Part shown: one piece after another, positions 5,383 to 62,431 of the stretch
Numbering within the stretch: the stretch's first letter is position 1
Layout: every line of letters starts with the position of its first letter
Source of the DNA: Macrostomum lignano
Lineage: Eukaryota
DNA: 64,000 nucleotides
Direction: 5' to 3'
Assembly: GCA_002269645.1 (NCBI GenBank)
Contig: NIVC01003542.1
Coordinates: 1 to 64,000 of the forward strand
Notes under the pieces: model-generated
The model's input: only the letters and a program-made list of their open reading frames with translations
Database searches by the model: none
Told to the model about the DNA's origin: nothing
Translations under genes and position numbers: made by a program

Positions 5383-5467
5383 GTACGTGTTTTTTATCGG
5401 GGGATATTTCGTACGAGACGTACATTTGCTTCTTAATATCATAAGTCTAAAAATTATGATAACAAAC

Positions 5468-6006: not shown

Positions 6007-6024
6007 AAGAAACTGGTAAGCTCA

Positions 6025-6545: not shown

Positions 6546-6761
6546 ATTTTTACCGAGTAAAAACTAGGCTTCAAAAAACAGGAAATCTCTCGTTTTTTAA
6601 AGTGAACCCTGCTTAAAGTAGCCTTACTCTTGGTTATAATAAAATAAACAAGTTATGATGAGGAAAAAGTCTCAAAACGGTTGCTGAGGCTGAGACAAAA
6701 ATACTATTATACGCTACTTAAAGTAGCAACTCTGAAAGGTCTACACCGGTTTTTGTTTCAG

Positions 6762-8218: not shown

Positions 8219-10477
8219 TCCTATGAGGCTTTTTATGGTTGACAGGTCAGTTCTTTTATTGTTGAAGCCTTAATCTCACAAAACTGTTAATATCTTACCT
8301 TCAGGACTTCTGATATGGTGTGTTCGAGCGGAGGTGTATTTATAAGTTTTATTTTTTAAAACCTGTTGAAATTAGAAAAAAGCGACAGTATGGTGTGTAC
8401 TCTGAACAGTTTTTTGCGGAATGCATTGCATCAAATAGGGTTTCACTATAGACGAACTAAAAAGAAGAAAACTTCATCTAGAAGAATATACATTAAAGAG
8501 ATAGGAGAAACGATAACCTATCTTAGTTTCCTTGACCTTGTACTTTAGCTGCCCAAATTTCAAGCATTACGCTTGACACTATGCTCGTATCTGAGACTAT
8601 TTGGTTGTGTTTGTTTTAGCAAAAAAGCTTTTTTATTGCCGTGCTCTGTTTGTTAGCTACTACTGATATTAGTCCTTGAGTGCTTTTTGTTTGTTTTGTC
8701 TAATTTTTTATGTTTTTAGCCTTAATGCTACATCTACTACTCATTAAATAAAATAACTGCGTTTTTCTATCCTTTTTAGCTGGTTCTTGGGCATTCCAAG
8801 TCTTTAATTGACATTAAGATAGCTTAATAAAGTATTGTATAGTAACAAGATTAAGTTTATTCTCCGTTTTCTGTGTAGAAAGTTATTTTTTATCTGCTCA
8901 AATTTTCAATCGACTTTCAAACCTACCGATAACAGATGAATCTTTCATTTAATTAAGAAATCTCGTTCCTTTTTTACTTGCGTTTTTATAATTTTATTTG
9001 TTTCTTATTAAGATCGTGCAATTTGATTGTGTTTTATTGTATTTCTATGCATAGTTTAGTAAACTAATGATAGATGACTGCTACTTAGTTATAAGTCTTT
9101 GTGCTAGAAATTTTGTCCTTTTTTCTAAATTGTTCTCAAAGCCAGCTATTAAATGTGTGCCAGTGCCGTATTTTTATTCCATTTTAGTTTTTTGTGTTTA
9201 GTTACTAATTAAATATACTAGTACATGTATATCATGTTGATTGGAGTGTGTAACATTTAGTTACGAGTGTATACACCACTGAACGTTTTTGTTCATACAA
9301 ATCAACTTGAGATTTCGTCGCTTTTTAATTACTAAATAGTGGACATCAGGACTACAAACTGTAGTCTGCTCCTTATCACTTTTGCCATCTCTTCTGATAA
9401 CTTTTGTAGATGAAGAGTGGACTGTTCAAAATCTGGGATGAAATTGAATATATATTCTATAAATAAATAATAATAATAATTTTCTAAATGAAAATGTTCA
9501 CGAATATCAATAGAGCTGAGCTATAAGAAAGGCAAGACAAAAAACTTGAACATTGGATCTGCCTCTCGTCAAAAGCAATATCAATTTTTGTGCTGATGAA
9601 ATGAAAACCTATCTCTGTAATGTAACTTTTAGATAAAACCTGCCTCTTTAAATTTTCCAAGAAACACAGTGTCCCGTCGCGTCCTACTTGAGTAATGATT
9701 AGTCTTTATATACAGGAATATTCACATCGTATTTTAACAAGCAGTTAAAAACGAGATCATTAAAATCAACGGTGTTAAAAAATACATCATTTATAACTAA
9801 GTAGCTGTACAAAACAAAAGTTTTCAAAAATGTTTTTTGTTAACTTCAAGAATTTTTTTTAATTATAAAAACACAATGCTTAGTTTCCTAACTTTGTAAT
9901 AGAGAATCTTTTTATAGCGGTAAAGGCAATATTTAACATGAAATTCTGCTTCATTTTTTTGTCGTCGTCGTAACTACACAGTCGCAGTTGTCTTCCTTGT
10001 TTTTTTGTAATTGTCGAGTAAACTTAACATTTAGTACTACCAGTCCTACTTTGTTAAATATTGACAGATTAATTTATGTTCAAAGTGCAGGAATTTTTCA
10101 TCGAAAATTAATGCGTTTTGATGATGACATAAAAATAAAATACTCTAATTTTAATTAATAATTTCTATATTTCATGATCATCTAATTGTAAGCCTCTCTT
10201 CAGAATGCTTAGAAAATATAAGCACACCGAAATGGACAGAAAAATTGGTTGCGTTGTATCTTGTAGCTGTCTTACTTTTTGTGAATTTAATAATTCAAAA
10301 CCTAGCCTAGCCCCATCAATAAACTAACCAATGCAAGCTCTGCTGGTACAAATTTCTGAAATTTCAGTACAAAGTTGGTTTTGACTAGATCACTTCATGT
10401 ATTATTTTGTTTTATTTAAATATCAGATATTGATAGTTTCTTTACAAAAACTGTCAGTTACTGAGTTACTGAACTTT

Positions 10478-11265: not shown

Positions 11266-12149
11266 CTCAAGGAGGACCTGCACCGAGTCACCAGCGAGGT
11301 CCGACTGGCCAGTCGTCTCGGCCAGCAGACGCCCTACGCGTCCAGCCCGAACGTCGCGACAGCGGCGGCGGCCTCGTCTGCCATGGATCCGGGCAGCCAC
11401 ATGCGCCGCGCCTCCTCTGTTCGGTTTCTGAACGGCGCCGGGGCGGGCGGCGCTGGCAGTACCGAGGAGCTTCATGAGGTGCACCAGCGGCTGCGCGACC
11501 TCGGCACCGAGCAGAGCCGACTGCGCGAGGAGCTCCGCTTGAAACCGTCGCCAGATGAGGCCCGCCTGCTCCGCGAGGAGCTCGACCGGGTACGCGCCGC
11601 TGAACGAGCGCCGAGCCGCGCGCCACCTCCCGGGAGGTGCAGCAGCGCTTGGCGGAGGCCAGCGAGGAGCTTCGCCAGGAACGGCATCGTCTTGGAGGCG
11701 GCGGTGGCAGCGGCGGTGAAGAAACCTCCGCGGCGGCGTTCGGCCGCCATGGTGGCGGCACCGGCCTGCGCCTGTCGGAGTCGCTGCGCGCCGCGCTGCA
11801 CGACCTGACCCAGCGGCGCCACGGGTCCGCCACGCCGCCACCGCTGCCAACAACTCCAGGCGGGCCGCCGATGCCGCCGCCCCGCCGCCGGGCCTCTCGC
11901 CGGAGGAGGTCCTATTCCGCTCCAGGGTCGACGAGTTGGAAGCGGCGAAGTCGTCGGCCGAGGAGGAGCTAGAGGCGGCGCGAAACCGGGTGCGGGAGGC
12001 GGAGGGCGCCAGGAACTGTCTGTCGAACGAGCTGGAGGAGTACAAGGCGCTGTTCTGCCGCGTCGAGTCGGAACGGCGCGCTTTGGAGACGCGAATTCAG
12101 GAGCTGTGCCAGGAGTTCGAGTCCAAGGAGAAAGCGCTGCGCGCTCAGG
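11266..12149 (+). CDS. CEP128: CEP128-like, exon 2 (two apparent -1 frameshifts near 11610-11630 and 11880)
   Basis: Acceptor aaaag|CTC gives LKEDLHRV...RRASSVRFL...LHEVHQRLRDLGTEQSRL (cf. CEP128 TGVRFV..LHGFHQSLRDLSSEQIRL). The coding phase passes through ORFs 11383, 11637 and 11936. Donor g|GTGAGG. Confidence 0.8.
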
Positions 12150-13239: not shown

Positions 13240-13530
13240 GATATAATTAGAGCCTAATGGACAGATGTGCAACCGACAGCTCAGCCGCAGCTATTGCGCG
13301 GCGCATCTGAAGGCTGCGTACGGCTATTCAGTCCAAGGACTGGGGGGTCGCCACACAGACCCTCAATTACCCCAGCTAATGCTGGCACCCATTTTACAGC
13401 TGGGTGAACTGAAGCAATGCAGAGTTAAGTGTGCTGCTCAAGGACACAAATTGTTCCGAGTGAGGTCAAGAATCGAACCCCCGACCTTCAGTCGTGAGTT
13501 CAACGTTCTAATCACTAGGCTACAACCCCC
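13240..13530 (-). mobile_element. tRNA-derived CORE-like SINE, copy 1
   Basis: Minus strand: GGGGTTGTAGCCTAGTGATTAG (A box), GGTTCGATTC (B box), a MIR-core-like block TGTGTCCTTGAGCAG..CACTTAACTCT..CTGTAAAATGGG, and a shared 3' tail. In CEP128 intron 3. Confidence 0.85.
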
Positions 13531-13829
13531 TCCGCAAAGTGCAAGTTTAGGATGCACTTTTCCTAAAATTCAATTCCACTAAACTTAACTCACTAAATGC
13601 TCAAGAGTGAATAACCGGGAATCGGGATGCTGAGATGCCAAAGCTCAATGGAAGGTGCTGATATATTTAAGTCACAATAGTGAACTTTAGAGGGCTCTCA
13701 GCAAAGCATCAATTTAAGCGCCATACCTATAGAAACCTTAGTCTGTAGGACCAGTTTTCGGCGCGAATTCAACTGCTCCAGACGGAGCTCCATTGCTAAA
13801 TGAATACTTTCAACGAACGCTATTTCCAG

Positions 13830-17639: not shown

Positions 17640-19928
17640 GCATAGGCTCTCCCGTTCTTTTTGTTTCTACTTTTATGTGTACTTTTGATCTGGGCACATT
17701 GTCGGTTTTGTAGTGGGGTCTAGCAGTGAGGAGACAGTCGCTTAAAATAGGAATAATAGACGATAGCATAGCCCATAAAAATCAATAAGCATTAGGCATC
17801 ATTACCACTTTCCCTAAAGTAGAATTGCCCTGCGATTGTCCCATAAGTAAGGCGCCGCCAGTTTTTCACAGGTGCATGTAAAAGATGTGTACATGTAGGT
17901 TTTCTTCAATGCCTACATTGAAGTACATTACTTTTTAACGTGTTCGTCTTCCTTTGTTGATTATTTTTATTTGAAGTGCACTCTTCATAAGAAATCTATA
18001 TATAGTCCATAATTACGGAAATTATCGCTTGATGAAAATCTTCAACTACATGCAGTTCGTTTAATTGTTTAATTCTATTTTTATTCTATTTCTATTTCTA
18101 TTTCATATCTACTTTAGGCAATAGAGATTTAGCTACGGCACTCTTGACAAAAAAATTTTACTTTAAGCACAGCTACTTTTTGGGAAAATTAAAGATACAA
18201 ATAACTTGTTCTTTATAATGTTTTTCACAAGGTCGCAACATTTTTGTTGGCAATTCTTTTAAAATATCAACATTACTGAACTGTTCAGATAATGGATTTT
18301 AATCAATATCAGATAAGTTTTGACGTGTGAATTTTATTGCAAATAATTACGTGTAAATGCTTGATTTGATTCCTGGTGGATCATCTCATTTTTATAATAA
18401 CTGTAAAGCCGGAATAAGATTTCAATTCTCTGTTGAATTTAGAAAGTAACACAAAAGCTAACTTCGATTTGTTTATTTTTCAATTGCTTTACCAAAACTA
18501 CCTGAATTTTGCTGGTGTGCTATTGCAGCTGTGCTGTATATTAAACTTTGATCGCTTTGTATCTTAGTAATGCATATGAGCTCTTTAAAATTGTCCCACA
18601 ACGAATTTAGTATTCCACTACTACACGCGCTAATGTTGTGCGGATTTTTCGCTCAATTTTGTCTATTAATATTATGAACAATTAATCTGTAAAGTTTAAT
18701 TTGTATTGACTGGATTGAAAATTATACCGAATTAGATGATTTTTCATTTATATTCATTTTAGATTTTTAAATGAGTAATTTATATACAGCTATATCCTGT
18801 AGTCGAATATACGCTCATGTGATTTTTTGTACTTCATCATTTCTCGTAAAAGCGGCCCAATTGAGGGCTGCATATTTTGATTCGTGTGTATCAGAGCTTT
18901 AAATAAAATAATATCCTTCAGATATGTCCATCGGTTGAAATTAGTTTGTTTTATTTTGTACGTGCATGCACTTGGCTGTGGTCTCATACAGGCCTTGTAA
19001 AATTTTCCTAATTCTAAAATCTTAAGTCTAATTCTAGCTATTCCCACGATAAAATTTTCGAAAAATGCATACTGCTACAAAATTAAGACAAAAATTAAAT
19101 CAAATCAATTACTAATCACTCAGTTACTAACTTACCTACTGTACCTTGGTTAAGTCGCTAATTACAGTAGGTAATAAAAGTTAATAATTGCATGCACACT
19201 TACATGTAAATTTCAAAATTGATTTAGAAAATGATCGTTTCGGAATTTATTGCCGATATTATGGTATTCTTTAAGTTTACGTTATACGCTACTGACAGTA
19301 GGCAAATAATGAACATTCGAAAAACGACTACGATTCAAAGAATTTTTTTGAAACAGTCGACGCAAAAGTAACTTGGATTGTCTGTTTCTATTACAATAAT
19401 AACAGTCGCCTATTTGTTTTATGCATACACATACATCATTCTTGCATGGACTTAACTTCCTGAGCTTTTTCGGTCCGTACACTAAGAGACTTGTGAAGTG
19501 GAAGACGGAAGCATTGTAATTGCATTCCGCGAGAATTTCTGGGCCCAAACTCTGAAATTAATTATTTGTATCGAAATACTCCGGTAGCGAGTTAGTGACA
19601 GTTTGCAATTCAGTGTCAAATAACGACCAAAGCGTTACAAAAGTCGAGTGTAAGGAGCAGCAATTTGTTAATAGTTGCTAGTCCTTAAAGGGGCCGTTTT
19701 ACTCAGAACGGTTTACTCAGACAGTTTAAGTTACTGTTTGCATTGGCAGCTGGCACTGAGGGTTGACTTTTGTCATTTTTTACCGTCAGATCAGCCCGGG
19801 TGAGTCTGTCGATTTATCTTAAAAAAGCTAATATTTTGGTTGGACTTATTGCAAACTAAGTAATTGTGCAGTTTTTTTTCACGAGATAAAAAGCTCATTA
19901 TACAGAAGCTACAACTTCGATAAAGAAC

Positions 19929-20891
19929 GGGAGCACCCCAACTGCCAGCCGGAAAACTGCCAGCCGACAACTGCCAGCCGGAAAACTGCCAGCCGACAAT
20001 TGCCAGCCGACAACTTCCAGCCGACAACTGCCAGTCGACAACTGCCAGCCGACAACTGCCAGTCGACAATTGCAAACTTGTCGACTAACAGTTCTTGCTT
20101 TGTAGGTCAGCAAAATTTGATCGAATTCAAATAAATTCTGTTAGTCACACTTCAGTTTTCTTAAAAGGAAAAGTTCTGGTGTGCAAATTTTATACCTATT
20201 ACAAGTCTGAGCGTGTAATGTAGACAGTTTATTTTAAGTTTCAAGCACTGAATTACGAGTTACGCCACTGATGTACGAGCTAAAGCCCCGTAGAATAGCT
20301 TCTAATGCGAGCTATAGAAACAACATGAACAATAAATCACATTAGCCCAAGAGTTACAGAAATAGGGGCAGTGTCCAATGGCTCGCCGCAGGGCTAGCAA
20401 GAGAACGAAGTCCACCCGCCGGCGGTGTCCAGCGCATTGGCGTCGCACAGCAAACAGTCCAGTGAGTCCACATATCGCTGAGTTTGAGCCTGGCCCCGCC
20501 TGAACAGGCCCTGCATGGTGAGCAGGACGTCCTATAGACAGGTAAAGGTTGGGGGCAGTAGCTTTCGGCACGGATGACGTAGTCCGAGCTATATTTTTTA
20601 CAGCTGTCTGCATTAGTGGTACTCCAGCTAGCACTTGTCCGGCTGGCAGTTGTCGGCTGGCAGTTGTCGGCTGGCAGTTTTCCGGCTGGCAGTTTTCTCG
20701 GCTGGCAATTGTCGGCTGGCAGTTGTCGGCTGGCAGTTGTCGACTGGCAGTTGTCGGCTGGCAATTGTCGGCTGGCAGTTGTCGACTGGCAGTTGTCGGC
20801 TGGCAGTTGTCGGCTGGCAATTGTCGGCTGGCAGTTTTCCGGCTGGCAGTTGTCGGCTGGCAGTTTTCCGGCTAGCAGTTGGGGTGGACCC
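19929..20891. mobile_element. Non-autonomous foldback / Mutator-like (MULE) element
   Basis: Long inverted arms (19929-~20072 and ~20635-20891) built of 14-bp units CTGCCAGCCGACAA, with GGG...CCC termini. Flanks GATAAAGAAC (left) and GATAAAGAC (right) look like a 9-bp TSD with one extra A. Confidence 0.8.
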
Positions 20892-21505: not shown

Positions 21506-21928
21506 ATGTCTGGACGCGGCAAAGGTGGTAAGGCTAAGGCCAAGGCTAAGACTCGCTCGTCTCGCGCTGGACTGCAGTTTCCAGTCGGCCGAATCCATCG
21601 CTTACTGCGCAAAGGCAACTATGCTGAGCGCGTTGGCGCTGGCGCTCCAGTCTACCTAGCGGCTGTGCTGGAATACCTGGCCGCCGAAGTGCTCGAGCTT
21701 GCCGGCAACGCTGCTCGCGATAACAAGAAGACTCGCATCATCCCGCGGCATTTACAGCTTGCCATCCGCAACGACGAAGAGCTGAACAAATTGCTCAGCG
21801 GTGTCACCATTGCCCAGGGTGGTGTGCTGCCTAACATCCAGGCTGTCCTGCTGCCAAAGAAGAGCGGTGCCTCTGGTAGCAGCAAGGCCAGCAGCGGCAA
21901 GAAGGCTGGCCCCAGCCAGGAGTTCTAA
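21506..21928 (+). CDS. H2AX: Histone H2A.X (intronless, 140 aa)
   Basis: Canonical H2A fold ([11 protein letters not shown]...[20 protein letters not shown]) plus an extended tail ending in the SQEF phosphorylation motif. Confidence 0.97.
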
Positions 21929-21994
21929 GCTGCTCAATCGTCAAGCGGCAAAGCCTTGTCCAAGTTTTAACTTTTAACGAAGTTACTGAACGCT

Positions 21995-22020
21995 AAAACG
22001 GCCCTTTTCAGGGCCACCAA
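21995..22020 (+). terminator. Histone mRNA 3' stem-loop (SLBP site)
   Basis: aaaac-GGCCCT-TTTC-AGGGCC-accaa, 71 nt after the stop codon. Confidence 0.95.
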
Positions 22021-23794
22021 ATTTATTTGATGCCAATTCGATCTGCTCTCGTTCGCTCTATTATTAATTAATTTTTCTTAGTAGGCCTAATCGATTTTAT
22101 TTTTTTAATGTGTACGATTAATTAATGTGGTAGAAAAAACAACAGCTAGTTAGTACCCGCATTGATCATTAGCTAGGCCTATGCTCTTCTACGTAGGTCG
22201 TAGCAAGCATGATTTATTTAGTGTCTACTCAATGTCTTGAATCTTGATACTATTTATTTTGCATTAATCAATGATTAGATTATGAAGTTTATTTTGACAG
22301 TTGGTACGGACGGTAACCAAATAAGGTTTCTGTCTACTATTTATCTTGACTATTATTGGGAATATTGCCATTGCCATTTGTAGTATTTTACATTACTGCA
22401 TTGTATTTGTAGACAGTGTAGTCTGCCTGCTATGCCAGTATGCATTTTGCATTCACATCAGAGATAAGTCCCCTCTTTAGCCGTTTAGGGTTCAATCTCA
22501 ATGAAATTGATTATTTAATTTAATCCAGCCCAGGATTTCGGTTTGTAAAATGCATGTCAAATTGCAGTTGAAGTATTTCTCGTGTGTTAGAATATAAACT
22601 CTGGTTAATTTGATACATTGTTACATTGTTATTCTTAAAACAACGCTAAGCCTCTACCTGAAGTACAATAATATTGATAATACTAATAGGCTATGTATTA
22701 GCCTATCCTGAAGCTATACAATACAAAATAATAAAAAGTCTAATTGTTTGTAGTCTAATTACGTGTACGTACTATGTAGCAAGCAATAGTCGTTTCTGGC
22801 CATTCCTCCACAGACCATGTGCAGCTACCAATTGCTTTTTTACACCTGATCCATAAAACCAAAAAATTCTCTGACTTTCCGACAGCTAGAGGATTTGAAG
22901 TATGAACGATGTGTACAGGACAGCGGCCCATTTGTCAACGTTGCCTCCTCACGTGTTGAACAAGAATTTTACTAATTTTTTGACATACTAGTTATGCGTA
23001 TGGCTACTAACAGTAAAAATATGAGAAAATTAAACTTCATTCAACGAAATATAAATGTTTTAAATTATCAGCCGCCTATTTTTACCGTAAGTGAAAATGG
23101 AAAATTCTCAAAGGACCTTTCAAGCCCTTCCACCGTTAATTCATCATAAGGAACTGGGTTATGAAACAGGCCTGATTGACTTCCTAGCTGCTGATTCTTG
23201 CTGCGAGGCTCAAATTGTAAATCATCTTTTTGAGCAGCGCTAATAACTGCTCAGTAAGACTTGACTCTGCTTTCATTTTTGTGAGGTTTTTGTACACTGC
23301 TGAAGAAAAAACTGTACTGAATTCTGTGAAATTAAATTGAGCTCCGCTGAAGCCAGCCAACTAGTGGGAGGACCGAGATCCAAGAATATAGTAGTGTACT
23401 CTCCTCACCCAACTTCCACCAGCCCACACTGGACTTCCGGCTACCCTTGATCTATCTCCAGCTAAAAGGTAAAGCCGCTGGTCACGTATTGCCCTGCCGC
23501 GCTTGCACTGACGCCACGCAGTGTGCTTAGCGGATTAGGACAATCTGCAGTACTGGGACAGTAAATCTTCCTTCCCGATTTAAATCTCTTATTTTCAGGA
23601 CAATTGAGTCGTGCATGGCTGACTGTGCATGGTGCTTTCAGCGAATTGTGTTTATTGAACACTCCGAGTTTGACCAACAATGTGCTGCAATTTTTCAAAA
23701 GCTTTAATAACCAAAAGCAACTTATAAGCTTGCATAATATACAGCTAAGCTGAGTGGAAACTCAGAATTTCGCTGAGTGTCCTGCAACGCTAAA

Positions 23795-25077: not shown

Positions 25078-25482
25078 CTCTCACAGCTGACCCTTCACTC
25101 TCACAGGGGGAGTCAGCTGACCCTTCACTTTCTCACAGGGGGAGTCAGCTGACCCTTCACTCTCTCACAGGGGGAGTCAGCTGACCCTTCACTTTCTCAC
25201 AGGGGAGTTATACTTTGACCCTTCATTCTCTCACAGGGGGAGTCACTTGACCCTTCACTCTCTCACAGGGGGAGTCAGCTGAACCTTCACTCTCTCACAG
25301 GGGGAGTCAGCTGAACCTTCACTCTCTCACAGAGGAGTTATAATTTGACCTTTCACTCTCACAGGGGAGTTATGCTTTGACCCTTCATTCTCTCACAGGG
25401 GGAGTCACTTGACCCTTCATTCTCTCACAGGGGGAGTCACTTGACCCTTCACTCTCTCACAGGGGAGTCAGTTGACCCTTCA
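25078..25482. repeat. Minisatellite, ~33-bp unit
   Basis: CTGACCCTTCACTCTCTCACAGGGGGAGTCAG variants; abuts SINE copy 2. Confidence 0.9.
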
Positions 25483-25726
25483 CGCAGCTATTGCTCGGCG
25501 CATCTGAAGGCTGCGTACGGCTGTTCAGTCCAAGGACTGGGGGGTCGCCATCACACACCCTCATTAACCCCAGCTAATGCTGGCACCCATTTTACCGCTG
25601 GGTGAACTGAAGCAATGCAGAGGTAAGGCCTTGCTCAAGGACACAGATAGTTCCGGGTTGGGTCGAGAATCGAACCCCCGACATTTCCGTCGTGAGTCAG
25701 ACGCTCTAACCACTAGGCTGCAATCC
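25483..25726 (-). mobile_element. tRNA-derived CORE-like SINE, copy 2 (3'-truncated)
   Basis: Same sequence as copy 1; the 3' tail is replaced by the adjacent minisatellite. Confidence 0.85.
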
Positions 25727-29651: not shown

Positions 29652-29960
29652 GGGATTGTATTCTAGTGGTTAGAGCGTCGGACTCACGACTGGTAGGTCA
29701 GGGGTTCGATTCCTGACCCACCAGGAACAATTGGTGTCCTTGAACAAGTCACTTATAACCCTGCATTGCTGCAGCTCACCCAGTTGTAAAATGGGTGCCA
29801 TCATTAGCTGGGGTAATTGAGGGTGTGTGTGGCGACCCCCCAGTCCTTGGACTGAACAGCCGTACGCAGCCTTCAGATGCGCCGCGCAATAGCTGCGGCT
29901 GAGCTGTCGGTTGCACATCTGGCCATTAGGGCAGGTATAATCAATTATATTATTATTATT
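29652..29960 (+). mobile_element. tRNA-derived CORE-like SINE, copy 3 (full length)
   Basis: TAGTGGTTAGAGC (A box), GGTTCGATTCC (B box), CORE-like block, structured 3' region and (ATT)n tail. Confidence 0.88.
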
Positions 29961-38829: not shown

Positions 38830-39097
38830 TAATAATAATAGTATGCAACCGACAGCTCAGCCGCAGCTATTGAACGGTGGCATGGAGCATCTGAAGGCTG
38901 CGTACGGCTGTTCTGTCCAAGGACTGGGGGGTCGCCACACACACCCTCAATTACCCCAGCTAATGCTGGCACCCACTTTATAGCTGGGGTGAACTGAAGC
39001 AAATGCAGAGTTAAGTGTTTTGCTCAAGGACACAGCTTGTTCCGAGTGGGTCGGGAATCGAACTTCAAACCTTTCAGTCGTGAGCCAACGCTCTAGC
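38830..39097 (-). mobile_element. tRNA-derived CORE-like SINE, copy 4
   Basis: Same family; (TAA)n tail at 38830-38840 and B box GATTCCCGACC on the minus strand. Confidence 0.85.
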
Positions 39098-43099: not shown

Positions 43100-44276
43100 A
43101 AACCCCAAAGTCTACGGGGGTTGGTTGCCTTAGACCCCAAAGTCTACGGGGGGGTTGGTTGCCTTAGACCCCAAAGTCTACGGGGGGGGGTTGGTTGCCT
43201 TAGACCCCAAAGTCTACGGGGGGGGGGGGTTGGTTGCCTTAGACCCCAAAGTCTACGGGGGGGTTGGTTGCCTTAGACCCCAAAGTCTACGGGGGGGGGG
43301 GGTTGGTTGCCTTAGACCCCAAAGTCTACGGGGGGGGGGTTGGTTGCCTTAGACCCCAAAGTCTACGGGGGGGTTGGTTGCCTTAGACCCCAAAGTCTAC
43401 GGGGGGGTTGGTTGCCTTAGACCCCAAAGTCTACGGGGGGGTTGGTTGCCTTAGACCCCAAAGTCTACGGGGGGTTGGTTGCCTTAGACCCCAAAGTCTA
43501 CGGGGGGGGGGTTGGTTGCCTTAGACCCCAAAGTCTACGGGGGGGTTGGTTGCCTTAGACCCCAAAGTCTACGGGGGGGTTGGTTGCCTTAGACCCCAAA
43601 GTCTACGGGGGGTTGGTTGCCTTAGACCCCAAAGTCTACGGGGGGGGGTTGGTTGCCTTAGACCCCAAAGTCTACGGGGGGTTGGTTGCCTTAGACCCCA
43701 AAGTCTACGGGGGGGTTGGTTGCCTTAGACCCCAAAGTCTACGGGGGGGGGTTGGTTGCCTTAGACCCCAAAGTCTACGGGGGGGTTGGTTGCCTTAGAC
43801 CCCAAAGTCTACGGGGGGGGGTTGGTTGCCTTAGACCCCAAAGTCTACGGGGGGGTTGGTTGCCTTAGACCCCAAAGTCTACGGGGGGGTTGGTTGCCTT
43901 AGACCCCAAAGTCTACGGGGGGGGGGTTGGTTGCCTTAGACCCCAAAGTCTACGGGGGGGGTTGGTTGCCTTAGACCCCAAAGTCTACGGGGGGGGGGTT
44001 GGTTGCCTTAGACCCCAAAGTCTACGGGAAGGGGTTGGTTGCCTTAGACCCCAAAGTCTACGGGGGGGGTTGGTTGCCTTAGACCCCAAAGTCTACGGGG
44101 GGGGGGGTTGGTTGCCTTAGACCCCAAAGTCTACGGGGGGGGGGTTGGTTGCCTTAGACCCCAAAGTCTACGGGGGGGTTGGTTGCCTTAGACCCCAAAG
44201 TCTACGGGGGGGGGGGGGTTGGTTGCCTTAGACCCCAAAGTCTACGGGGGGGGGGGTTGGTTGCCTTAGACCCCAA
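43100..44276. repeat. Minisatellite: constant 27-mer plus variable G-tract
   Basis: TTGGTTGCCTTAGACCCCAAAGTCTAC followed by G6-G12, x ~33. Confidence 0.95.
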
Positions 44277-44721
44277 GGTCTAAGGCACTGGTTGCAGGAC
44301 GGATGTCGCCGAAGGCGTTGGCACCAGGGCCCACAATTTTGCTGCAGTTATTATTCTTCTTCTTTTCATTACTTAAAATGTCAGAAGACGCCAAACTAAA
44401 AATTCTGTATATCAAAACAAATCTCTCACTGTCGGTACTCGAAAGCAATCGTACAAGCAACAATGAGAGGTTGGGAACTTCAATCAGCTGATTAATTCTG
44501 AAGTACACTTGTAAGATGTAAGACGAGGAAGCTGATAGTTAAACAGGAATTTTAGCAGTCGGTTTTTTTCGATGGTGCTTTTAGAAGTCAAGGACTGTGA
44601 TGCAATTTATTCATCATATTGACGGGCGCCTCAAATCCAGGGGTAATTTTTAAACTTAGCTCATTTTTTAATTCCTAAAGTAGTTCGTTGCTCCTGTCAC
44701 CCTTCTGTTCGCTGGGATACT

Positions 44722-45770: not shown

Positions 45771-45966
45771 GTAAATACTATTAGTAGGAGATTGCTTTGC
45801 ATTACCAGTAATTGAGTGGTATCTTTGTAGCTGTGCATCGAATACTCTGCTTGTCCTTTACAATTGCAACTATGCTAAGAGCTATTGCCCAATCTTATCA
45901 TTAAATACAGTATAATTTATCATCTTATCATTATCATTAAATACAGTAGGATCTTATCATTAAATA

Positions 45967-46935
45967 CTTCGGGTGTGTCATAAGTAATGTCACTGATGTG
46001 AAAACAGACGAACTTGCAATCGCAGATTAACAAAACTGTAGCAATCAACAGCATAGAGTCCCCCAATATCAATCACCCTCTGGAGGTGCTCATACAGCTT
46101 GTCCACCTCAGCCTGCAGGTGTTTTTCCTCCAACTGCCGTAACCAGTGCAACGTGGCCTGTTTGACCTCTTCATGGTTTGCAACTCTTCTTGGAAAAGTC
46201 AGCCTTCAGCCATTTGAACAGGAATCTCTTGCAAAAGTTGAAGTCCGGGCTATAGGGACTCTGTCAGAGCATATTCACTCGCCGTACAGGCAGAAAATTC
46301 GAAACAGCCTTCAGATGTGCAGCCGTGCGGTGTCCATCTGCCACAGAACTTCGTCCAGGTGACATGGATTTGACCGGAGAGTGCGCCAGAGGTCTCCAGT
46401 GTGCCGGACAAAGTCGATAAAATACTGGCCATCGACCTTGGTGTTCGGTGGAGTTGTGCAGATGGAGACTCGTTTGTTTGGCGTGAAGGCTACCAGCAGC
46501 ATGGTCTTCTTGTCCAAGATGGACTTCCTAGTCACCATCGGCCTGGAGTCCCCAGCTCCCAGCCAGCAGCGATTGTCTGCCTTGCTGCCCTTGCCATCCA
46601 GGTGGAGCCAGCTTTCATCCTCAGCAACCAGGCAGTTTAGGATGTCATTCAAGCCCCGGCTGCTAAACACCTTGCGGATCTGCTTGGTGCAGGCGTCATG
46701 TCGAGATTCATGGTGATTTTTGTTCGCTGCATGGACGGTTTTTCATCGCGTTGCACTTGCTAAATCTGCTTGGCGTATTCTTGCGATAGCTTGGGCCATA
46801 AACAACCTATGCACGTCTCAAATGCACTGCTATTGCTTCACTAAGTATACTTTGCAGCTACACTACCCACAAGTCCATGTGCCTACATATTTTAGACAGA
46901 GGCCTGCAGTGACATTACTTATGACACACCCGAAG
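45967..46935 (-). mobile_element. Internally deleted mariner-type element, 969 bp
   Basis: Perfect 29-bp TIRs CTTCGGGTGTGTCATAAGTAATGTCACTG with TA on both sides (45965-66, 46936-37). Minus-strand transposase remnant with EDESW, WQMDTARLH and QSPYSPDFNFCKRFLF. Confidence 0.92.
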
Positions 46936-46979
46936 TACAGTATAAATACAGTATTACATGTATTTATTATATATTAATA

Positions 46980-47265
46980 CGGGTTGTAGCCTAGACGGGG
47001 TTGCAGCCTAGGGGAGGTTGTAGACTAGAGGGGGTTGCAGCCTAAAGAGGGTTGCAGCCTAGAGGCAGTTGCAGCCTAGAAGCGGTTGCAGCCTAGAGGG
47101 GTTGTAGCCTAGAGGGGGTTGCAGCCTAGAGGGGTTGTAGCCTAGAGGGGGTTGCAGCCTAGAGGGGTTGTAGCCTAGAGGGGGTTGCAGCCTAGAGGGG
47201 TTGTAGCCTAGAGGGGGTTGCAGCCTAGAGGGGTTGTAGCCTAGAGGGGGTTGCAGCCTAGAGGT
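46980..47265 (+). repeat. 16/17-bp tandem array derived from the SINE 5' end
   Basis: (A)GGGGGTTGTAGCCTAG x ~17, running directly into SINE copy 5. Confidence 0.9.
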
Positions 47266-47530
47266 GGAGAACGTGGGACTCACGACTGAAAGGTCAGGGG
47301 CTCGATTCCCGACCCACTCGGAACAAACTGTGTCAATGAGCACGTCACTTAACTTTGCATTTCTCCAGTTCACCCAGCTGTAAAATGGGTGCCAGCATTA
47401 GCTGGGGTGTAATTGAGGGTGTGTGCGGCGACCCCGAACAGGGCAGCCTTCAGAGATGCGCCACCGTTCAATAGCTGCGGCTGAGCTGTCGGTTGCACCT
47501 CTGCCCATTTGGGCAGGTGTAATAAAAAAT
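47250..47530 (+). mobile_element. tRNA-derived CORE-like SINE, copy 5
   Basis: GGACTCACGACTGAAAGGTCAGGGGCTCGATTCCC head, CORE-like block and shared tail. Confidence 0.85.
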
Positions 47531-49171
47531 CGACTTCGATTCGGCAGCGATGAACCCAGTGTGCCTCCATACGTATCCGTGTGCTGCTCAGGGGCCAGCG
47601 GAATGCACTTCTTGCTGACAAGGAATTTTTATAGAACTTGTCCACTCAGAGGCAAATTTCCCAACCAAAACTTTTCTGTGGAAACAACTGTCAATTGTAG
47701 AAACAGAATTTTGGGCTGCTTTTAATTGCTTAGATTTAATCACAGAAATTGCTTTTGTCGTGCTAAGCCACAGGCATATACTTAGTAAAACAGCTTTCTA
47801 ATTTCAGTTCAGTAGCAAAGAAGAATACATAAGCTATTTTATAAAAATGAAGCCAGCTGAAACGATATTGATAAGTCAAGCAGCCCGAGCTTGCAGCCGT
47901 AAACAACTTGCTAATTGGTTCAGCAATAATGTACATTAGCCAGTCCACTGAAATGTACATGGCAGTTTTCGGCTGGAATTTTCGAGTAATTGGCAATAAA
48001 AATTGGGGCGGGGCGGAGGGGGTAGTGTGGAAAGGCGCAGTTGGAGGGTTTAAGCTGGGGGTAAGAGCCAATAAATGAGCCTTGGCTTTAAAAATACATT
48101 AAAATGCTTTTGTTTAACTTGCTACTGAACTAAAAGTAGCTTACACGCAAATGTGCTGAGTGGCCCCCATCTAGTAGTTATTCTAGTATTTGTGTGCTAA
48201 GCTAGAAAACAGATATCCAATGTCTCGTACGCAAACGAGTATCTCAAGCCTATTTTCTTCTGTACCAGTATGCTATCTCGAGACAGTTGCATTTTGGCGC
48301 TTGTGTCGATCAAATCTTTGATGAACTTTACTAGAACTTCCTTTGTCCTTTGCAGCAAGGTTTTTAAAAATCGAAACTTTATCTCCGAGATTTTCTGTTT
48401 AGACAATTCAGACAATTCAGACAATTCAGACTGGGGCAACGCTTACGGAAAATCAATAAAAACAAAATCCTGTTCAAAACATTCTGCTACTGAAGCAAGG
48501 TTTAGCCATAGACAAAACTTTCCCCAGTCTGAATTGTCTGAATTGAATTTCCGCTAGTTTTTTTAGAACTGGACTTTGATCAAAATTGAACGTGAAAAGG
48601 TGTAGTTGGTCTTTCATTCGCGTCCGATTTAGAGTTTTACCGCATAGCCAAGCAAATTATGTGTTTTCATCAAGGACCACTAGATTCTAGTGGTCCTTGG
48701 TTTTCATTTGTTCAAAGCTTTAGTCTATGGCAAAACCGACAAATTTCGCAATTTACATTGAACTCTGTAGAATTGACTTATGGTGAGTATTGTTATTAAA
48801 TTTTAAAGCGCAAAAATAAAAATTATCGAGATGCTTTCAGTTGTTACTACTTAAAATACGGTTAAAAAACAGTAGTGACATTGGAACCTTCAGTTAGTCC
48901 TTCTGTGGTGAAAGCGCTCTCTTTGACTCAGTCCCAGGTCTCGTCCCCTCTGGACAGCTGCGCCAAGAAGACCCGAGACCAGAAAGTACGAGTAGAGTGC
49001 CAACTTTTTCCCGAATGCCCGTGTTCAAGACAAGATTAGGCTGATTTTAGTTGCTGCTCTTGTTGCTATCTGTCGTATCGCAAGTGCATTTAGTATACTC
49101 TCAAGAAATCCGATAGAGCATACTATATAATAATAATTTTTTTTCGATCAGCAAAATCCTTAGTCAATTAA

Positions 49172-49480
49172 GCAGATGTGCAACCGACAGCTCAGCCGCA
49201 GCTATTGCGCGGCACATCTGAAGGCTGCGTACGGCTGTTCAGTCCAAGGACTGGGGGGTCGCCACCCGGGGAGGGGGGGTTTCACAAACTCGAAATTTCA
49301 CAACGAAATTTCATAACATCGAAAACTCAAATAGCAACCACTTTCACAAGGTCGAAGCTTCACAAGGTCGAAACTTCACAAGGTCGAAACTTCACAGCGT
49401 AGAAAACTACTGCATGGTTCTTGTTATATTAAGTTTTCGGTGTTGTGAAATTTCGACCTTGTGAAAGCACACCCTCAAGG
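49172..49480 (-). mobile_element. SINE copy 6 (3' part only), interrupted by a MITE
   Basis: Tail sequence AGATGTGCAACCGACAGCTCAGCC...GTCGCCAC, resuming as ACACCCTCAA after the insertion. CORE and tRNA region are missing. Confidence 0.8.
49278..49468. mobile_element. ~190-bp MITE with internal 14-bp repeats
   Basis: TIRs GGTTTCACAAACTCGAAATTTCACAAC vs reverse complement GCTTTCACAAGGTCGAAATTTCACAAC; internal CACAAGGTCGAAACTT-type repeats. Confidence 0.7.
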
Positions 49481-50850
49481 CTACAACCCCCTCTAGGCTA
49501 CAACCCCCTCTAGGCTACAACCCCCTCTAGGCTACAACCCCCTCTAGGCTACAACCCCCTCTAGGCTACAACCCCCTCTAGGCTACAACCCCCTCTAGGC
49601 TACAACCCCCTCTAGGCTACAACCCCCTCTAGGCTGCAACCCCCTAGAGGGCTACAACCCCCTCTAGGCTACAACCCCCTCTAGGCTACAACCCCCTCTA
49701 GGCTACAACCCCCTCTAGGCTACAACCCCCTCTAGGCTACAACCCCCTCTAGGCTACAACCCCCTCTAGGCTACAACCCCCTCTAGGCTACAACCCCCTC
49801 TAGGCTACAACCCCCTCTAGGCTACAACCCCCTCTAGGCTACAACCCCCTCTAGGCTGCAACCCCCTAGAGGGCTACAACCCCCTCTAGGCTACAACCCC
49901 CTAGAGGGCTACAACCCCCTCTAGGCTACAACCCCCTCTAGGCTACAACCCCCTCTAGGCTACAACCCCCTCTAGGCTACAACCCCCTCTAGGCTACAAC
50001 CCCCTCTAGGCTGCAACCCCCTAGAGGGCTACAACCCCCTCTAGGCTACAACCCCCTCTAGGCTACAACCCCCTCTAGGCTACAACCCCCTCTAGGCTAC
50101 AACCCCCTCTAGGCTACAACCCCCTCTAGGCTACAACCCCCTCTAGGCTACAACCCCCTCTAGGCTACAACCCCCTCTAGGCTACAACCCCCTCTAGGCT
50201 ACAACCCCCTCTAGGCTACAACCCCCTCTAGGCTACAACCCCCTCTAGGCTACAACCCCCTCTAGGCTACAACCCCCTCTAGGCTACAACCCCCTCTAGG
50301 CTACAACCCCCTCTAGGCTACAACCCCCTCTAGGCTACAACCCCCTCTAGGCTACAACCCCCTCTAGGCTACAACCCCCTCTAGGCTACAACCCCCTCTA
50401 GGCTACAACCCCCTCTAGGCTACAACCCCCTCTAGGCTACAACCCCCTCTAGGCTACAACCCCCTCTAGGCTACAACCCCCTCTAGGCTACAACCCCCTC
50501 TAGGCTACAACCCCCTCTAGGCTACAACCCCCTCTAGGCTACAACCCCCTCTAGGCTACAACCCCCTCTAGGCTACAACCCCCTCTAGGCTACAACCCCC
50601 TCTAGGCTACAACCCCCTCTAGGCTACAACCCCCTCTAGGCTACAACCCCCTCTAGGCTACAACCCCCTCTAGGCTACAACCCCCTCTAGGCTACAACCC
50701 CCTCTAGGCTACAACCCCCTCTAGGCTACAACCCCCTCTAGGCTACAACCCCCTCTAGGCTACAACCCCCTCTAGGCTACAACCCCCTCTAGGCTACAAC
50801 CCCCTCTAGGCTACAACCCCCTCTAGGCTGCAACCCCTCTGGGCTACAAC
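49478..50850 (-). repeat. 17-bp minisatellite (~80 copies) identical to the SINE 5' end
   Basis: CTCTAGGCTACAACCCC tandem, the reverse complement of AGGGGGTTGTAGCCTAG. Confidence 0.95.
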
Positions 50851-51489
50851 GTACGTATGATTCGTACGTATAAGCTGAGAAACTCAAGTAAGCTTGATAG
50901 TGTGTCCTAGGGGGGAAATTTTCCACTCCAGACTCTGGCTCTTACGTGTGCTTGGTAGCCTCCGCCCAGCCAGTGTCTTTGCCAAGAAGATTAAGAAGCC
51001 AACTCAAATATTGTATATAATATAAAACAGCGGACCCCATGGGAGGGTGAAGAGGGTGTTTGCCAGAGGGTGCTGAGCTGAACTGGTTCGCAACCCCCCC
51101 CTCCCCCAGAGGGGAGGCCTCGCTAGTCTGAGTGCATTATTGATTTTGTGCTTGAAAGAAAGAAAAGCCCTCCTGCCCCCTCTCCCCTTGGACATGAGCC
51201 AAGCGCGAGCTCCAAGACCGAGCAGGCGGGACCAAAGTTTTCAGCTGCAATGGCTGCCCTGCCGGGCTCAAGAAAAAAATATATATTATTCCCACCTCGC
51301 CTTCCAGCGCCAGCAGTTCGCTCAGACACTCTGTATGTCTTGCTACTACCGCTGCTGCAGGCTGGGGGGGGGCTAATCCTCCTTCCACAAAGACAGACAA
51401 TCAATAATATTAGCCTCAAGATCCGAACAGTTTCAAAAAGAAAATCGCTAAGGAGTAACGGGATCTAGGGTTCTCACCAACCCCACTGC

Positions 51490-52125
51490 ATCTGTATCTA
51501 TTCTCATCTCTGGCCACCGTGTCTCAGTCTCACACAACCACTGTATATCTATTCTAATCTCTTGTCACCGTGTCTCAGTCTCACACAACCACTGTATATC
51601 TATTCTAATCTCTTGTCACCGTGTCTCAGTCTCACACAACCACTGTATATCTATTCTAATCTCTTGTCACCGTGTCTCAGTCTCACACATCCACTGTATA
51701 TCTATTCTAATCTCTGGCCACCGTGTCTTAGTCTCACAGATCCACTGCATATCTATTCTCATCTCTGGCCACCGTGTCTCAGCCTCACAGATCCACTGTA
51801 TATCTATTCTCATCTCTGGCCACCGTGTCTCAGCCTCACAGATCCATTGTATATCTATTCTCATCTCTGGCCACCGTGTCTCAGTCTCACAGATCCATTG
51901 TATATCTATTCTCATCTCTGGCCACCGTGTCTCAGCCTCACAGATCCACTGTATATCTATTCTCATCTCTGGCCACCGTGTCTCAGTCTCACAGATCCAC
52001 TGTATATCTATTCTCATCTCTGGCCACCGTGTCTCAGTCTCACAGATCCACTGTATATCTATTCTAATCTCTGGCCACCGTGTCTCAGTCTCACAGATCC
52101 ACTTATATCTATTCTCATCTCTGGC
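51490..52125. repeat. Minisatellite, 51-bp unit
   Basis: CTCTGGCCACCGTGTCTCAGTCTCACAGATCCACTGTATATCTATTCTCAT x ~12. Confidence 0.93.
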
Positions 52126-52547
52126 CATCGAATCTCAGCTCAATCTCACCGATCCACTGTCTATTCTATTCTCAAGCCAGTCAGAATTCAATCATTATCA
52201 CCTTTAAGAGGATGATTTTTATAAGGACATTTAACAATCTCTCTATCGACTGAACAACCGTTAGCTTGAAATTTTTTTTCCATTTTTCCCCATTCTTCTA
52301 TCCAACGCTTAATCATCCTCCGATAAAAGCAGGCACTTCATCGTTAATTTTGATGAGCCCACCCTAGATCTTCTCCCAGGTGATTTGCATATAGCTATTT
52401 CCCAGATGAAGCTGAGAGGCTGTCTGACTCCATGCCGAATAATAGGAAAGACTCTCTCTAGACTAGAGAGATTAACGCGCCCAGCAGACCCCCTCTGACT
52501 CATCGCTGCAGCAGTCACGTGATTATTTGACTTTATTTCCAAATCAG

Positions 52548-60623: not shown

Positions 60624-60931
60624 GTACCTTGAATTGCCTCACTCTGCGTCGCTGGGATCAGAGAGACTCAAGGAGGAGGGCGCAAGGCCACGCTCACTGA
60701 TCCCAGGCGCAATTGAGTTGGCTTGATTGAGTCCTGCGCGAGCTCTCAGGCATGTGGGGGGGGGGGTGCCTGCCTGAATCGGGCTCGAATACGCCATTGA
60801 AAAAAGCGAATCGGATTTACGGCGCCAAGTGCCACGAGTCGAGACGGTAAAAGTGCAGAACGCGGGCATCAAGTAGAATGGTTCAAAAAACTCTGAAATC
60901 ATCGGAGCGCTACTATGCTAACTACTACAAT

Positions 60932-61818
60932 TCCTCCAGTAAGCCTTGACTTCTCAGCAATTCCCCCAGTAAGCCTTGACATCTCAGCAATTCCCCCAGT
61001 AAGCCTTGACATCTCAGCAATTCCCCCAGTAAGCCTTGACATCTCAGCAATTCCCCCAGTAAGCCTTGACTTCTCAGCAGTTCCCCCAGTAAGCCTTGAC
61101 ATCTCAGCAATTCCCCCAGTAAGCCTTGACTTCTCAGCAGTTCCCCCAGTAAGCCTTGACATCTCAGCAGTTCCCCCAGTAAGCCTTGGCATCTCAGAAA
61201 TTCCCTCCGTAAGACTTGAAATCTCAGCAATTCCCCAGTAAGACTTGACTTCTCAGAAATTCCCCAGTAAGACTTGACTTCTCAGCAATTCCCCAGTAAG
61301 CCTTGACATCTCAGCAGTTCCCCCAGTAAGCCTTGACATCTCAGCAGTTCCCTCCGTAAGACTTGACATCTCAGCAGTTCCCCCAGTAAGCCTTGACATT
61401 TCAGAAATTCCCTCCGTAAGACTTGAAATCTCAGCAATTCCCTCCGTAAGACTTGAAATCTCAGCAATTCCCTCCGTAAGACTTGAAATCTCAGCAATTC
61501 CCTCAGTAAGACTTGAAATCTCAGCAATTCCCTCAGTAAGACTTGAAATCTTAGCAATTCCCTCCGTAAGACTTGAAATCTCAGCAATTCCCTCAGTAAG
61601 ACTTGAAATCTTAGCAATTCCCTCCGTAAGACTTGAAATCTCAGCAATTCCCTCAGTAAGACTTGAAATCTCAGCAATTCCCCAGCAAGACTTGACATCT
61701 CAGCAATTTCCCCAGTAAGCCTTGAAATCTCAGCAATTCCCTCAGTAAGACTCAACGTCTCAGCAATTTCCCCAGTAAGCCTTGAAATCTCAGCAATTCG
61801 CCAGCAAGACTTGACATC
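60932..61818. repeat. Minisatellite, 30-bp unit (same family as 7454-8218)
   Basis: CTCAGCAATTCCCCCAGTAAGCCTTGACAT variants. Confidence 0.95.
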
Positions 61819-62431
61819 TCTATTTTTTGATGCAGTGCAGCTACCTACAGAATTTCGTATTCCTTTAGCCATACACTTTAAACATTTTTAAAGTCGAGTG
61901 CTGAAAATCAAGTGTTCAGGTGCGCAGAAGAGCCAGCAGTAGTCAAGAATAGAATCTGACCTATAGTTCTGTCACTACTCAGTCTACAGAAGTAAAAGAA
62001 GGCTGGTCTGCCTACTGTAGCTGCTGCTTGTTCAAGTTTGTAATGCCATGCAGGCTGGCAAGATCTTGTGGCGACCCCCCCCTTCACTATTCACCTTCTA
62101 GCTCTGTGCCTTATAGGTCAAAACACAGGTCTAGTTAGGTTAGGGAGGGGCAAATCCGCTGTTACAGCAGAAAGTTTTGTAGAGTGTAAGTGTATAGAGA
62201 AGATTTAAAGCTGAAAAGACAGAGTAAACAAAGAGTAGATTAAATCGTTATAGAAGCTAGCGGCCAGTTCTTTGAATTCAGACTGCACATCATGCAGCAG
62301 AGTATAAATCGACCTGGCTTCACTAGTTAGTCATGATAGATAGCTAAGCTTAGTGACCAGAAAAAGGGCATAGTAGCTAAATATAGTGTTCAGAATATAA
62401 TCGGCGCCATCTAGAGAACTCGACCAGAGTG

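What the first reader, a model, noticed from the sequence alone, without database searches (positions are those of the whole stretch)
46980..50850. Minisatellites born from the SINE's own Pol III promoter head
Seen: the 17-bp unit of the arrays at 46980-47265 (~17 copies) and 49478-50850 (~80 copies) is AGGGGGTTGTAGCCTAG. That is exactly the 5'-terminal 17 nt of the intact SINE at 13514-13530, where it occurs once. Both arrays sit at the head position of a SINE copy, so the same site amplified in two copies. Established: the A box of tRNA-type promoters is TRGCNNARYGG, and each unit junction reads TAGCCTAGAGG, a near-A-box. Inference: this SINE family is a recurrent minisatellite seed, yielding tandem TFIIIC half-sites that could shift Pol III starts or act as boundary elements.
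Basis: partly seen in the sequence, partly recalled or inferred. Interest (0 to 1): 0.75.

Follow-up and report, generated by a model that had tools for sequence, protein, structure and literature searches.

The report
SINE-head minisatellites in a flatworm intron
Two tandem arrays in one intron of a flatworm gene were made by repeating the first 17 bases of a tRNA-derived SINE, an ordinary case of a mobile element seeding a minisatellite, with no sign that the arrays act as Pol III promoter or boundary elements.

Summary
The window is Macrostomum lignano contig NIVC01003542.1:1-64000. Array 1 (46980-47261, 17 units) and array 2 (49479-50851, about 80 units, minus strand) repeat AGGGGGTTGTAGCCTAG.

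Array 1 runs in register into a diverged SINE body. Array 2 adjoins only a wreck of a SINE: positions about 15-170 are deleted, a 188-bp foldback is inserted, and the tail is lost. Flanks are unrelated and the two SINE bodies carry different subfamily markers, so these are two separate insertions.

Independence of the two amplifications is not shown. The arrays share the amplified segment, lie 2.2 kb apart in inverted orientation in one intron, and begin with similar outer units.

Arrays make up 30% of the window. No other array matches the SINE. Four other SINE copies have no head array, and the three with a readable head carry it once.

The TFIIIC idea is not supported. The units hold only a near-A-box (10/11), which is the low-affinity half of the promoter, and array 2 has no B box at all.

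SINE-derived minisatellites and satellites are already known. A genome-wide count could not be run.

The parts
46980..47261 (+). Array 1: 17 units of the SINE head. The 7 outer units are degenerate. The 10 inner units are a perfect 33-bp dimer repeated five times (16-nt AGGGGTTGTAGCCTAG plus 17-nt AGGGGGTTGCAGCCTAG).
47262..47530 (+). Body of SINE copy 1, in register with array 1. It is the most diverged copy (79-81% identical to the others). B box GGCTCGATTCC (1 mismatch). Subfamily marker CCACCGTTCAATAG.
49479..50851 (-). Array 2: about 80 units, mostly AGGGGGTTGTAGCCTAG. It holds four micro-inversion variants (CTAGAGG to CCTCTAG) and five GCAGCC units. The outermost units are a truncated CGTTGTAGCCCAG followed by AGGGGTTGCAGCCTAG.
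49468..49478 (-). 11-nt remnant of the SINE middle (TTGAGGGTGTG, SINE positions about 171-181), joined directly to the last array unit. SINE positions about 15-170, including the B box, are deleted.
49280..49467 (.). Foldback (inverted-repeat) insertion built from TTCACAAGGTCGAAAC-like 16-mers. It interrupts the SINE remnant. Filler CCGGGGAGGGGGGG lies at 49266-49279.
49173..49265 (-). 3' part of SINE copy 2 (positions 187-279; 98-99% identical to the copies at 13530 and 29652). Subfamily marker GCCGCGCAATAG. The usual 3' end and tail are missing.
13240..13531 (-). Reference SINE copy with a single head (17-mer at 13515-13531). A box TAGCCTAGTGA, B box GGTTCGATTCT, start-to-start distance 43 nt. 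Candidate 8-bp target-site duplication AACTTGCA. The head is also single in both homeologs.
45771..52547 (+). GT..AG intron of a multi-PDZ (MPDZ/PATJ-like) gene that holds both arrays. UniProt model A0A1I8HCS6 joins ...DQPAAAEQ (ends 45770) to VTPKTANN (starts 52548).
45965..46937 (.). Mariner-like element remnant with perfect 31-bp terminal inverted repeats, ending 42 bp 5' of array 1. This is context, not part of the arrays.

Best explanation
These are two minisatellites (variable-number tandem repeats) made by tandem amplification of about 17 bp at the head of a tRNA-derived SINE. The amplified piece is one leader A plus tRNA-like positions 1-16, which covers the first 8 nt of the A box.

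The arrays sit on two separate SINE insertions that lie tail to tail in one intron of a multi-PDZ gene of Macrostomum lignano.

Inferred mechanism. A short head duplication arose in place. It then grew and was homogenised by replication slippage and unequal sister-chromatid exchange or gene conversion. The same process shapes the roughly 30 other arrays in this window.

Further inferred steps. Array 1 is the older array. Array 2 is the younger and more homogeneous. Array 2 later lost most of its SINE, probably by misalignment between the array junction TAGAGGG and the internal SINE sequence TTGAGGG, and it also took up a foldback insertion.

The arrays are most likely neutral intronic DNA and not Pol III elements.

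Shown: SINE-head origin, register, separate insertions, rearrangements, and absence of a B box. Inferred: in-place growth after insertion, and the mechanism that began the duplication.
For: - The unit matches the SINE head 17/17, and array 1 runs straight into the SINE body.
- The SINE is a real retroposon. It has A and B boxes 43-45 nt apart start to start. There are six dispersed copies at 79-90% identity, and outside the arrays it is the only repeat family dispersed across the window. Target-site duplications of 10 and 8 bp and ATT-rich tails are present.
- No flank homology exists between the two loci apart from the SINE tails (84%), and the subfamily markers differ.
- Array 1 has degenerate outer units and perfect inner dimers. 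Array 2 repeats blocks of variant units. Both patterns are typical of growth by unequal exchange.
- Arrays cover 29.7% of the window. Arrays shared with the two homeologous contigs differ in copy number: 16.4/12.4/6.3, 12.5/4.5/8.5 and 3.8/10.8/11.6. Array turnover in place is therefore active in this genome.
- Three homeologous subgenomes and high repetitiveness are reported for this species (PMC10733133).
Against: - Both arrays amplify exactly the same segment, with the same junction (CCTAG|AGGGGG). Random slippage at two sites would not be expected to do this.
- No short direct repeats flank the unit, so the classical direct-repeat slippage model does not explain the first duplication.
- No target-site duplication was found around either array-bearing copy, so it is not shown that the arrays lie inside the original insertions.
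- The array strands have no hairpin potential.
- Only 6 SINE loci could be examined.
Confidence: 0.6

Rival explanations
1. One amplification, then local copying. The array arose once at one SINE head. It was then copied to the neighbouring inverted SINE head 2.2 kb away by gene conversion or template switching. Alternatively, the whole segment 46980-50851 is a foldback-like composite element with array termini.
For: - The amplified segment and junction are the same in both arrays. Both hold GTAGCC and GCAGCC units and both 16- and 17-nt units.
- Both begin, at the outer end, with a truncated GTAGCC unit followed by a 16-nt GCAGCC unit.
- The arrays face outward in inverted orientation, each flanked by TA.
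- A real foldback-like transposon with tandem-repeat termini exists in this window (19927-20890), with a 9-bp target-site duplication and an empty site in L001.
Against: - The SINE bodies next to the arrays are only 84% identical and carry different subfamily markers.
- No homology exists beyond the SINE and the arrays.
- The pairing of length and base variants differs: 16-nt units are T-type and 17-nt units C-type in array 1, and the reverse holds in array 2.
- A TA flank is weak evidence in AT-rich DNA.
Confidence: 0.2
2. Arrays inherited by retrotransposition. A SINE source gene acquired a duplicated head. Upstream A-box-like units shift the Pol III start, so new copies are born with two or more head units (comparable to the 5' repeats of SVA) and expand later.
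For: - The amplified segment starts at or near the SINE 5' end, which is a natural boundary, and is the same at two insertions.
- TFIIIC tolerates A-B distances of 30-67 bp (PMC11811891). One or two extra units could therefore be transcribed. In array 1 the nearest A-like box starts 45 nt before the B box.
Against: - The two array-bearing copies carry different subfamily markers.
- The remnant next to array 2 is 98-99% identical, over 93 nt, to copies with a single head.
- All three readable heads elsewhere are single, as are the heads of the 13530 copy in both homeologs.
- No target-site duplications enclose the arrays.
Confidence: 0.12
3. The arrays are tandem TFIIIC half-sites that shift Pol III starts or act as chromatin boundaries.
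For: Each unit junction is a 10/11 match to the A box.
Against: [quoted passage not shown]
- There is no B box in the units or anywhere near array 2.
- Array 1's B box and its nearest A box are both mutated.
- The array sequences drift like neutral DNA.
Confidence: 0.03
4. Assembly artefact. The array lengths or the rearranged SINE at array 2 are errors of the long-read assembly.
For: Tandem repeats are error-prone in assemblies. Only one assembly was seen.
Against: - The arrays are 0.3 and 1.4 kb, which I judge to be well within long-read length.
- They have structured internal variants.
- Other arrays of this contig reappear in two independent homeologous contigs.
Confidence: 0.03

Closest known systems
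Alu-derived minisatellites in human (Jurka and Gentles 2006; Ahmed and Liang 2012, PMC3389668)
   Same: A short internal piece of a SINE is repeated in tandem next to the parent element. In human, 23% of minisatellites and satellites are TE-derived, and 136 cases are partial-Alu duplications at the 5' end of an Alu. The way most of them begin is unexplained.
   Different: Most human cases have 2-3 units of tens of bp. Here a 17-bp unit reaches 17 and about 80 copies. The parent is a tRNA-derived SINE, not a 7SL-derived one.
[quoted passage not shown] 1998, listed in PMC9659126)
   Same: A particular short motif inside one SINE family seeds minisatellites at several loci. This is the 'recurrent seed' idea.
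   Different: In mouse the recurrence at many loci is documented. Here only two neighbouring loci were seen, and their independence is not shown.
Hy/Pol III satellite of Hydromantes and satellite 1 of Xenopus (tRNA-related region of SINE-like elements; table in PMC9659126)
   Same: Tandem arrays built from the tRNA-related, promoter-bearing part of a SINE.
   Different: Here the unit is 17 bp and holds only part of the A box.
PcH-sat of Patella, derived from a Nin-SINE (PMC11121367)
   Same: A satellite derived from a truncated invertebrate tRNA-type SINE that lacks boxes A and B.
   Different: PcH-sat is a pericentromeric satellite built from the 3' part of the SINE. Here the arrays are intronic minisatellites built from the head.
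SVA elements (5' CCCTCT hexamer repeats and internal VNTR)
   Same: A tandem array sits at the 5' end of a non-autonomous retroposon.
   Different: In SVA the arrays are part of the transcript and are spread by retrotransposition (my own knowledge). That was not shown here.

Membership tests
tRNA-derived SINE (SINE2/tRNA) | Internal A and B boxes at tRNA-like spacing | tested here: met
   A box with 1-2 mismatches and B box with 0-1 mismatches in the four copies that keep a recognisable A box. Start-to-start distance is 43-45 nt.
tRNA-derived SINE (SINE2/tRNA) | Dispersed short copies with target-site duplications and a simple-repeat or A/T-rich tail | tested here: met
   Six copies at 79-90% identity. 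Target-site duplications TAAACCATCA (10 bp) and AACTTGCA (8 bp). ATT-rich tails. None was found for the array-bearing copies.
tRNA-derived SINE (SINE2/tRNA) | Head recognisable as a tRNA (cloverleaf) | tested here: not met
   ARAGORN finds no tRNA. Rfam gives no tRNA match, even at E up to 10 on the intact copy. Only the boxes, their spacing and a T-arm-like stem, seen by eye, remain.
tRNA-derived SINE (SINE2/tRNA) | 3' end shared with a partner LINE; membership of a core-domain superfamily (Nin-DC, Deu, Meta and others) | not tested
   There is no LINE in the window, and no SINE library or core sequences were available in the tools or in the papers read.
TE-derived minisatellite | Head-to-tail units of about 10-100 bp that match a segment of a TE | tested here: met
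   Only these two arrays match the SINE (E 1e-4 to 5e-7).
TE-derived minisatellite | Array contiguous and in register with the parent element | tested here: met
   Array 1 is directly in register. Array 2 is joined to an internally deleted, interrupted remnant.
TE-derived minisatellite | Copy-number variation between alleles or homeologs | not testable with these tools
   The homeologous array loci could not be fetched. Other arrays of the same contig do vary between homeologs.
Pol III type-2 promoter or extra-TFIIIC site | B box, the high-affinity TFIIIC anchor | tested here: not met
   No B box in the unit and none near array 2. The requirement is taken from PMC11811891.
Pol III type-2 promoter or extra-TFIIIC site | A box | tested here: inconclusive
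   The junction matches at 10/11 (T-type units) or 9/11 (C-type units). Binding cannot be judged from sequence.
Pol III type-2 promoter or extra-TFIIIC site | TFIIIC or Pol III occupancy, or transcripts | not testable with these tools
   No ChIP or RNA data were available.
Foldback-like transposon with tandem-repeat termini | Inverted terminal arrays bounded by a target-site duplication, and an empty site elsewhere | tested here: inconclusive
   Inverted outward-facing arrays are present, but only TA is shared by the flanks. The empty site could not be tested. A clear example with a 9-bp duplication and an empty site lies at 19927-20890.
SVA-like retroposon carrying its array | Arrays enclosed by target-site duplications in several copies of one lineage | tested here: inconclusive
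   No target-site duplications were found. The two copies carry different subfamily markers. The sample is too small.

The most novel reading that the evidence does not exclude
Head amplification is driven by the SINE's own life cycle, not by random slippage. The unit runs from the transcript's 5' end to the D-loop, the size of a 5' tRNA fragment. Two routes are possible. Units could be added at insertion, by serial template jumps of the LINE reverse transcriptase onto such fragments. Or units could be added through upstream A-box-like units that move the Pol III start, so that each generation of copies carries more heads. Either route would make this a self-propagating 5' tandem repeat on a tRNA-type SINE, and would explain why two insertions amplified exactly the same segment.
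Probability: 0.08. Interest if true: 0.65.

Novelty: new member of a known kind. Interest (0 to 1): 0.25.

Why it matters
This is a clean, well-resolved example of a minisatellite born from a defined piece of a mobile element, in a genome that is unusually rich in such arrays. If head amplification proved to be frequent and independent across the SINE family, it would point to a sequence- or promoter-linked trigger for the first duplication. That first step is still unexplained for most TE-derived tandem repeats (PMC3389668). As it stands, the finding mainly helps repeat annotation of the M. lignano genome. It also warns that intron size and assembly in this species are strongly shaped by array growth.

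Tried and rejected
(1) Fetching the homeologous array loci or more M. lignano DNA.
- Protein searches with a BCAT exon, the PDZ exon and a transposase fragment gave no M. lignano protein with a contig on record.
- Exact look-ups of a mariner ORF and of P0121 found nothing.
- Only the H2A.X gene worked. It gave two homeologous loci that stop about 15 kb short of the arrays.

(2) Collection scans. Scans of metagenome and viral contigs for the two-unit pattern and for the SINE core found nothing.

(3) Segmental inverted duplication of array plus SINE. Rejected: no flank homology.

(4) The SINE as a general seed of the window's arrays. Rejected: no other array unit matches the SINE. The 34-mer at 43102-44282, which looks head-like by eye, is not significant.

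(5) Hairpin-driven slippage. Rejected: both array strands fold no better than shuffled sequence (z +3.2 and +1.4). A G-quadruplex from the G5 runs, which are spaced 12 nt apart, is allowed only by a simple model and remains speculative.

(6) Direct-repeat slippage (the Jurka-Gentles model). The AG...AG repeats would give a 15-nt unit, not the observed 16-17 nt. This follows from reading the sequence.

(7) tRNA identity of the head. No ARAGORN or Rfam match.

(8) SINE core-domain family. The papers read give no sequences to compare.
Full report
**Source.** The H2A.X ORF of the window (21506-21928) is on record at the same coordinate of contig NIVC01003542.1 of assembly GCA_002269645.1. Locus L003 from that contig equals window 11506-31928. 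Papers citing this accession identify it as Macrostomum lignano. Two further contigs carry the same gene with the same neighbours. This fits the three homeologous subgenomes described for the species (PMC10733133).

**Observation.**
- TRF reports 46981-47264 (17.0 copies; 33-bp dimer at 91%) and 49472-50850 (80.9 copies, 97%).
- The 15-nt core GGGGTTGYAGCCTAG, with up to 2 mismatches, occurs 95 times against 0.2 expected. It is found only in these arrays and in two SINE heads.

**The SINE.**
- BLAST with the copy at 13240-13531 finds six copies: 13240-13531(-), 25483-25726(-), 29652-29930(+), 38844-39095(-), 47262-47530(+) and 49173-49265(-). Identities are 79-90%.
- Outside the arrays it is the only repeat family dispersed across the window.
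- The four copies that keep a recognisable A box carry A boxes (TAGCCTAGTGG type) and B boxes (GGTTCGATTCC) whose starts are 43-45 nt apart.
- Two copies have convincing target-site duplications of 10 and 8 bp, and the tails are ATT-rich.
- The head is not recognised as a tRNA by ARAGORN or Rfam.
- An A precedes the G run in two of the three readable heads, so the 17-nt unit is a contiguous piece of SINE sequence. Between 3 and 9 further nucleotides lie between the target-site duplication and that A. The unit is therefore near, but not provably at, the 5' terminus.

**Anatomy of array 1.**
- It starts at 46980 after AT-rich flank.
- Seven degenerate units come first. Five perfect copies of a 33-bp dimer follow.
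- The array then runs into the SINE body...GCAGCCTAG|AGGTGGAGAACG... against the consensus TAG|TGGTTAGAGCG.
- That body is the most diverged copy.

**Anatomy of array 2 (minus strand).**
- It is homogeneous but holds four micro-inversion units and five GCAGCC units arranged in repeated blocks.
- Its last unit is joined to TTGAGGGTGTG. This matches SINE positions about 171-181 at 11/11, immediately before the point where the SINE resumes.
- A 188-bp foldback and 14 nt of filler follow, then SINE positions 187-279. The normal 3' end is missing.
- The SINE next to array 2 is thus a wreck that has lost its B box.
- The deletion junction (CCT|TGAGGG) resembles the array junction (CCTAGAGGG). This suggests array-to-body misalignment after the array had formed. 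This step is inferred.

**One event or two?**
- With the arrays masked, the two loci share only the SINE tails (62 nt, 84%). The bodies carry different markers: CCACCGTTCAATAG against GCCGCGCAATAG. These are therefore two insertions and not a segmental duplication.
- Against independence: the amplified segment and its junction are identical, the arrays are 2.2 kb apart in inverted orientation, and the outermost two units are alike in both.
- A real foldback-like transposon with tandem-repeat termini, a 9-bp target-site duplication and an empty site in homeolog L001 lies at 19927-20890. Inverted array pairs in this genome can therefore be single mobile units.
- I could not decide between independent amplification, local copying and inheritance.

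**Background.**
- Arrays cover 29.7% of the window.
- Arrays shared with the homeologs vary in copy number.
- No other array unit matches the SINE.
- The head of the 13530 copy is single in all three homeologs.
- Head amplification is therefore neither general nor fast.

**Function.**
- Both arrays lie in a 6,777-bp GT..AG intron (45771-52547) of a multi-PDZ gene.
- The junction is a 10/11 A-box match. [quoted passage not shown]
- The units have no B box, and array 2 has none nearby. I find no support for a promoter or boundary role.

**Comparison with known cases.** SINE-derived minisatellites and satellites are well documented. Examples are Alu-derived minisatellites, a mouse B1-derived VNTR family, satellites from the tRNA-related region of SINE-like elements in Hydromantes and Xenopus, and a Nin-SINE-derived satellite.

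**Verdict.** This is a new member of a known kind. The decisive genome-wide and homeolog comparisons could not be run, because no route to further M. lignano DNA was found.

Noticed in passing
window 19927-20890; L001 about 9385-9393; L002 8682-9379: A foldback-like DNA transposon of about 955 bp whose inverted termini are tandem 14-mers (9.5 and 17.8 copies), with a 9-bp target-site duplication CGATAAAGA. The site is empty in homeolog L001. The element is present with shorter arms (3 and 7.9 units) in L002.
   Followed up: partly
whole window; L001, L002: About 30% of the window is tandem arrays (33 arrays, units 4-61 bp). Arrays shared by the three homeologous contigs differ in copy number, for example 16.4/12.4/6.3 for the 29-mer at 12237.
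   Followed up: partly
window 49640-49660, 49862-49882, 49897-49917, 50017-50037 (within array 2): A 7-nt micro-inversion (CTAGAGG to CCTCTAG) recurs four times in array 2. Three of the four are followed by a GCAGCC unit, which indicates duplication of multi-unit blocks.
   Followed up: partly
window 25084-25726: The SINE copy at 25483-25726 is cut at about position 255 and abuts a 32-mer array unrelated to the SINE. The array has 12.5, 4.5 and 8.5 copies in the three homeologs.
   Followed up: partly
window 43102-44282: A 34-mer array whose poly-G tract varies from 5 to 12 G between units. The unit looks like the SINE head by eye, but the similarity is not significant.
   Followed up: yes
window 7455-8231 and 60928-61820: Two 30-mer arrays 53 kb apart share 22 nt of their unit but no flanking sequence. 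This is a dispersed minisatellite family of unknown carrier.
   Followed up: partly
window 45965-46937: A mariner-like element remnant with perfect 31-bp terminal inverted repeats and a broken DDE transposase ORF, ending 42 bp from array 1. No close relatives from this species were found in the protein database.
   Followed up: partly
window 21506-22040: An intronless H2A.X-type histone gene (C-terminal SQEF) followed by a histone 3' stem-loop (Rfam RF00032, 34.7 bits). The protein is identical in all three homeologous contigs.
   Followed up: partly
window 11383-11808 versus L001 126-6968: The CEP128-like gene is recorded as a 975-residue product on two contigs but as only 247 residues on the window's contig. 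This suggests a broken model or a decaying homeolog.
   Followed up: no
window 4649-7380: Two exons of a branched-chain aminotransferase gene are separated by an intron filled with 37-mer and 32-mer arrays. No M. lignano protein for this gene appeared in the protein database.
   Followed up: no
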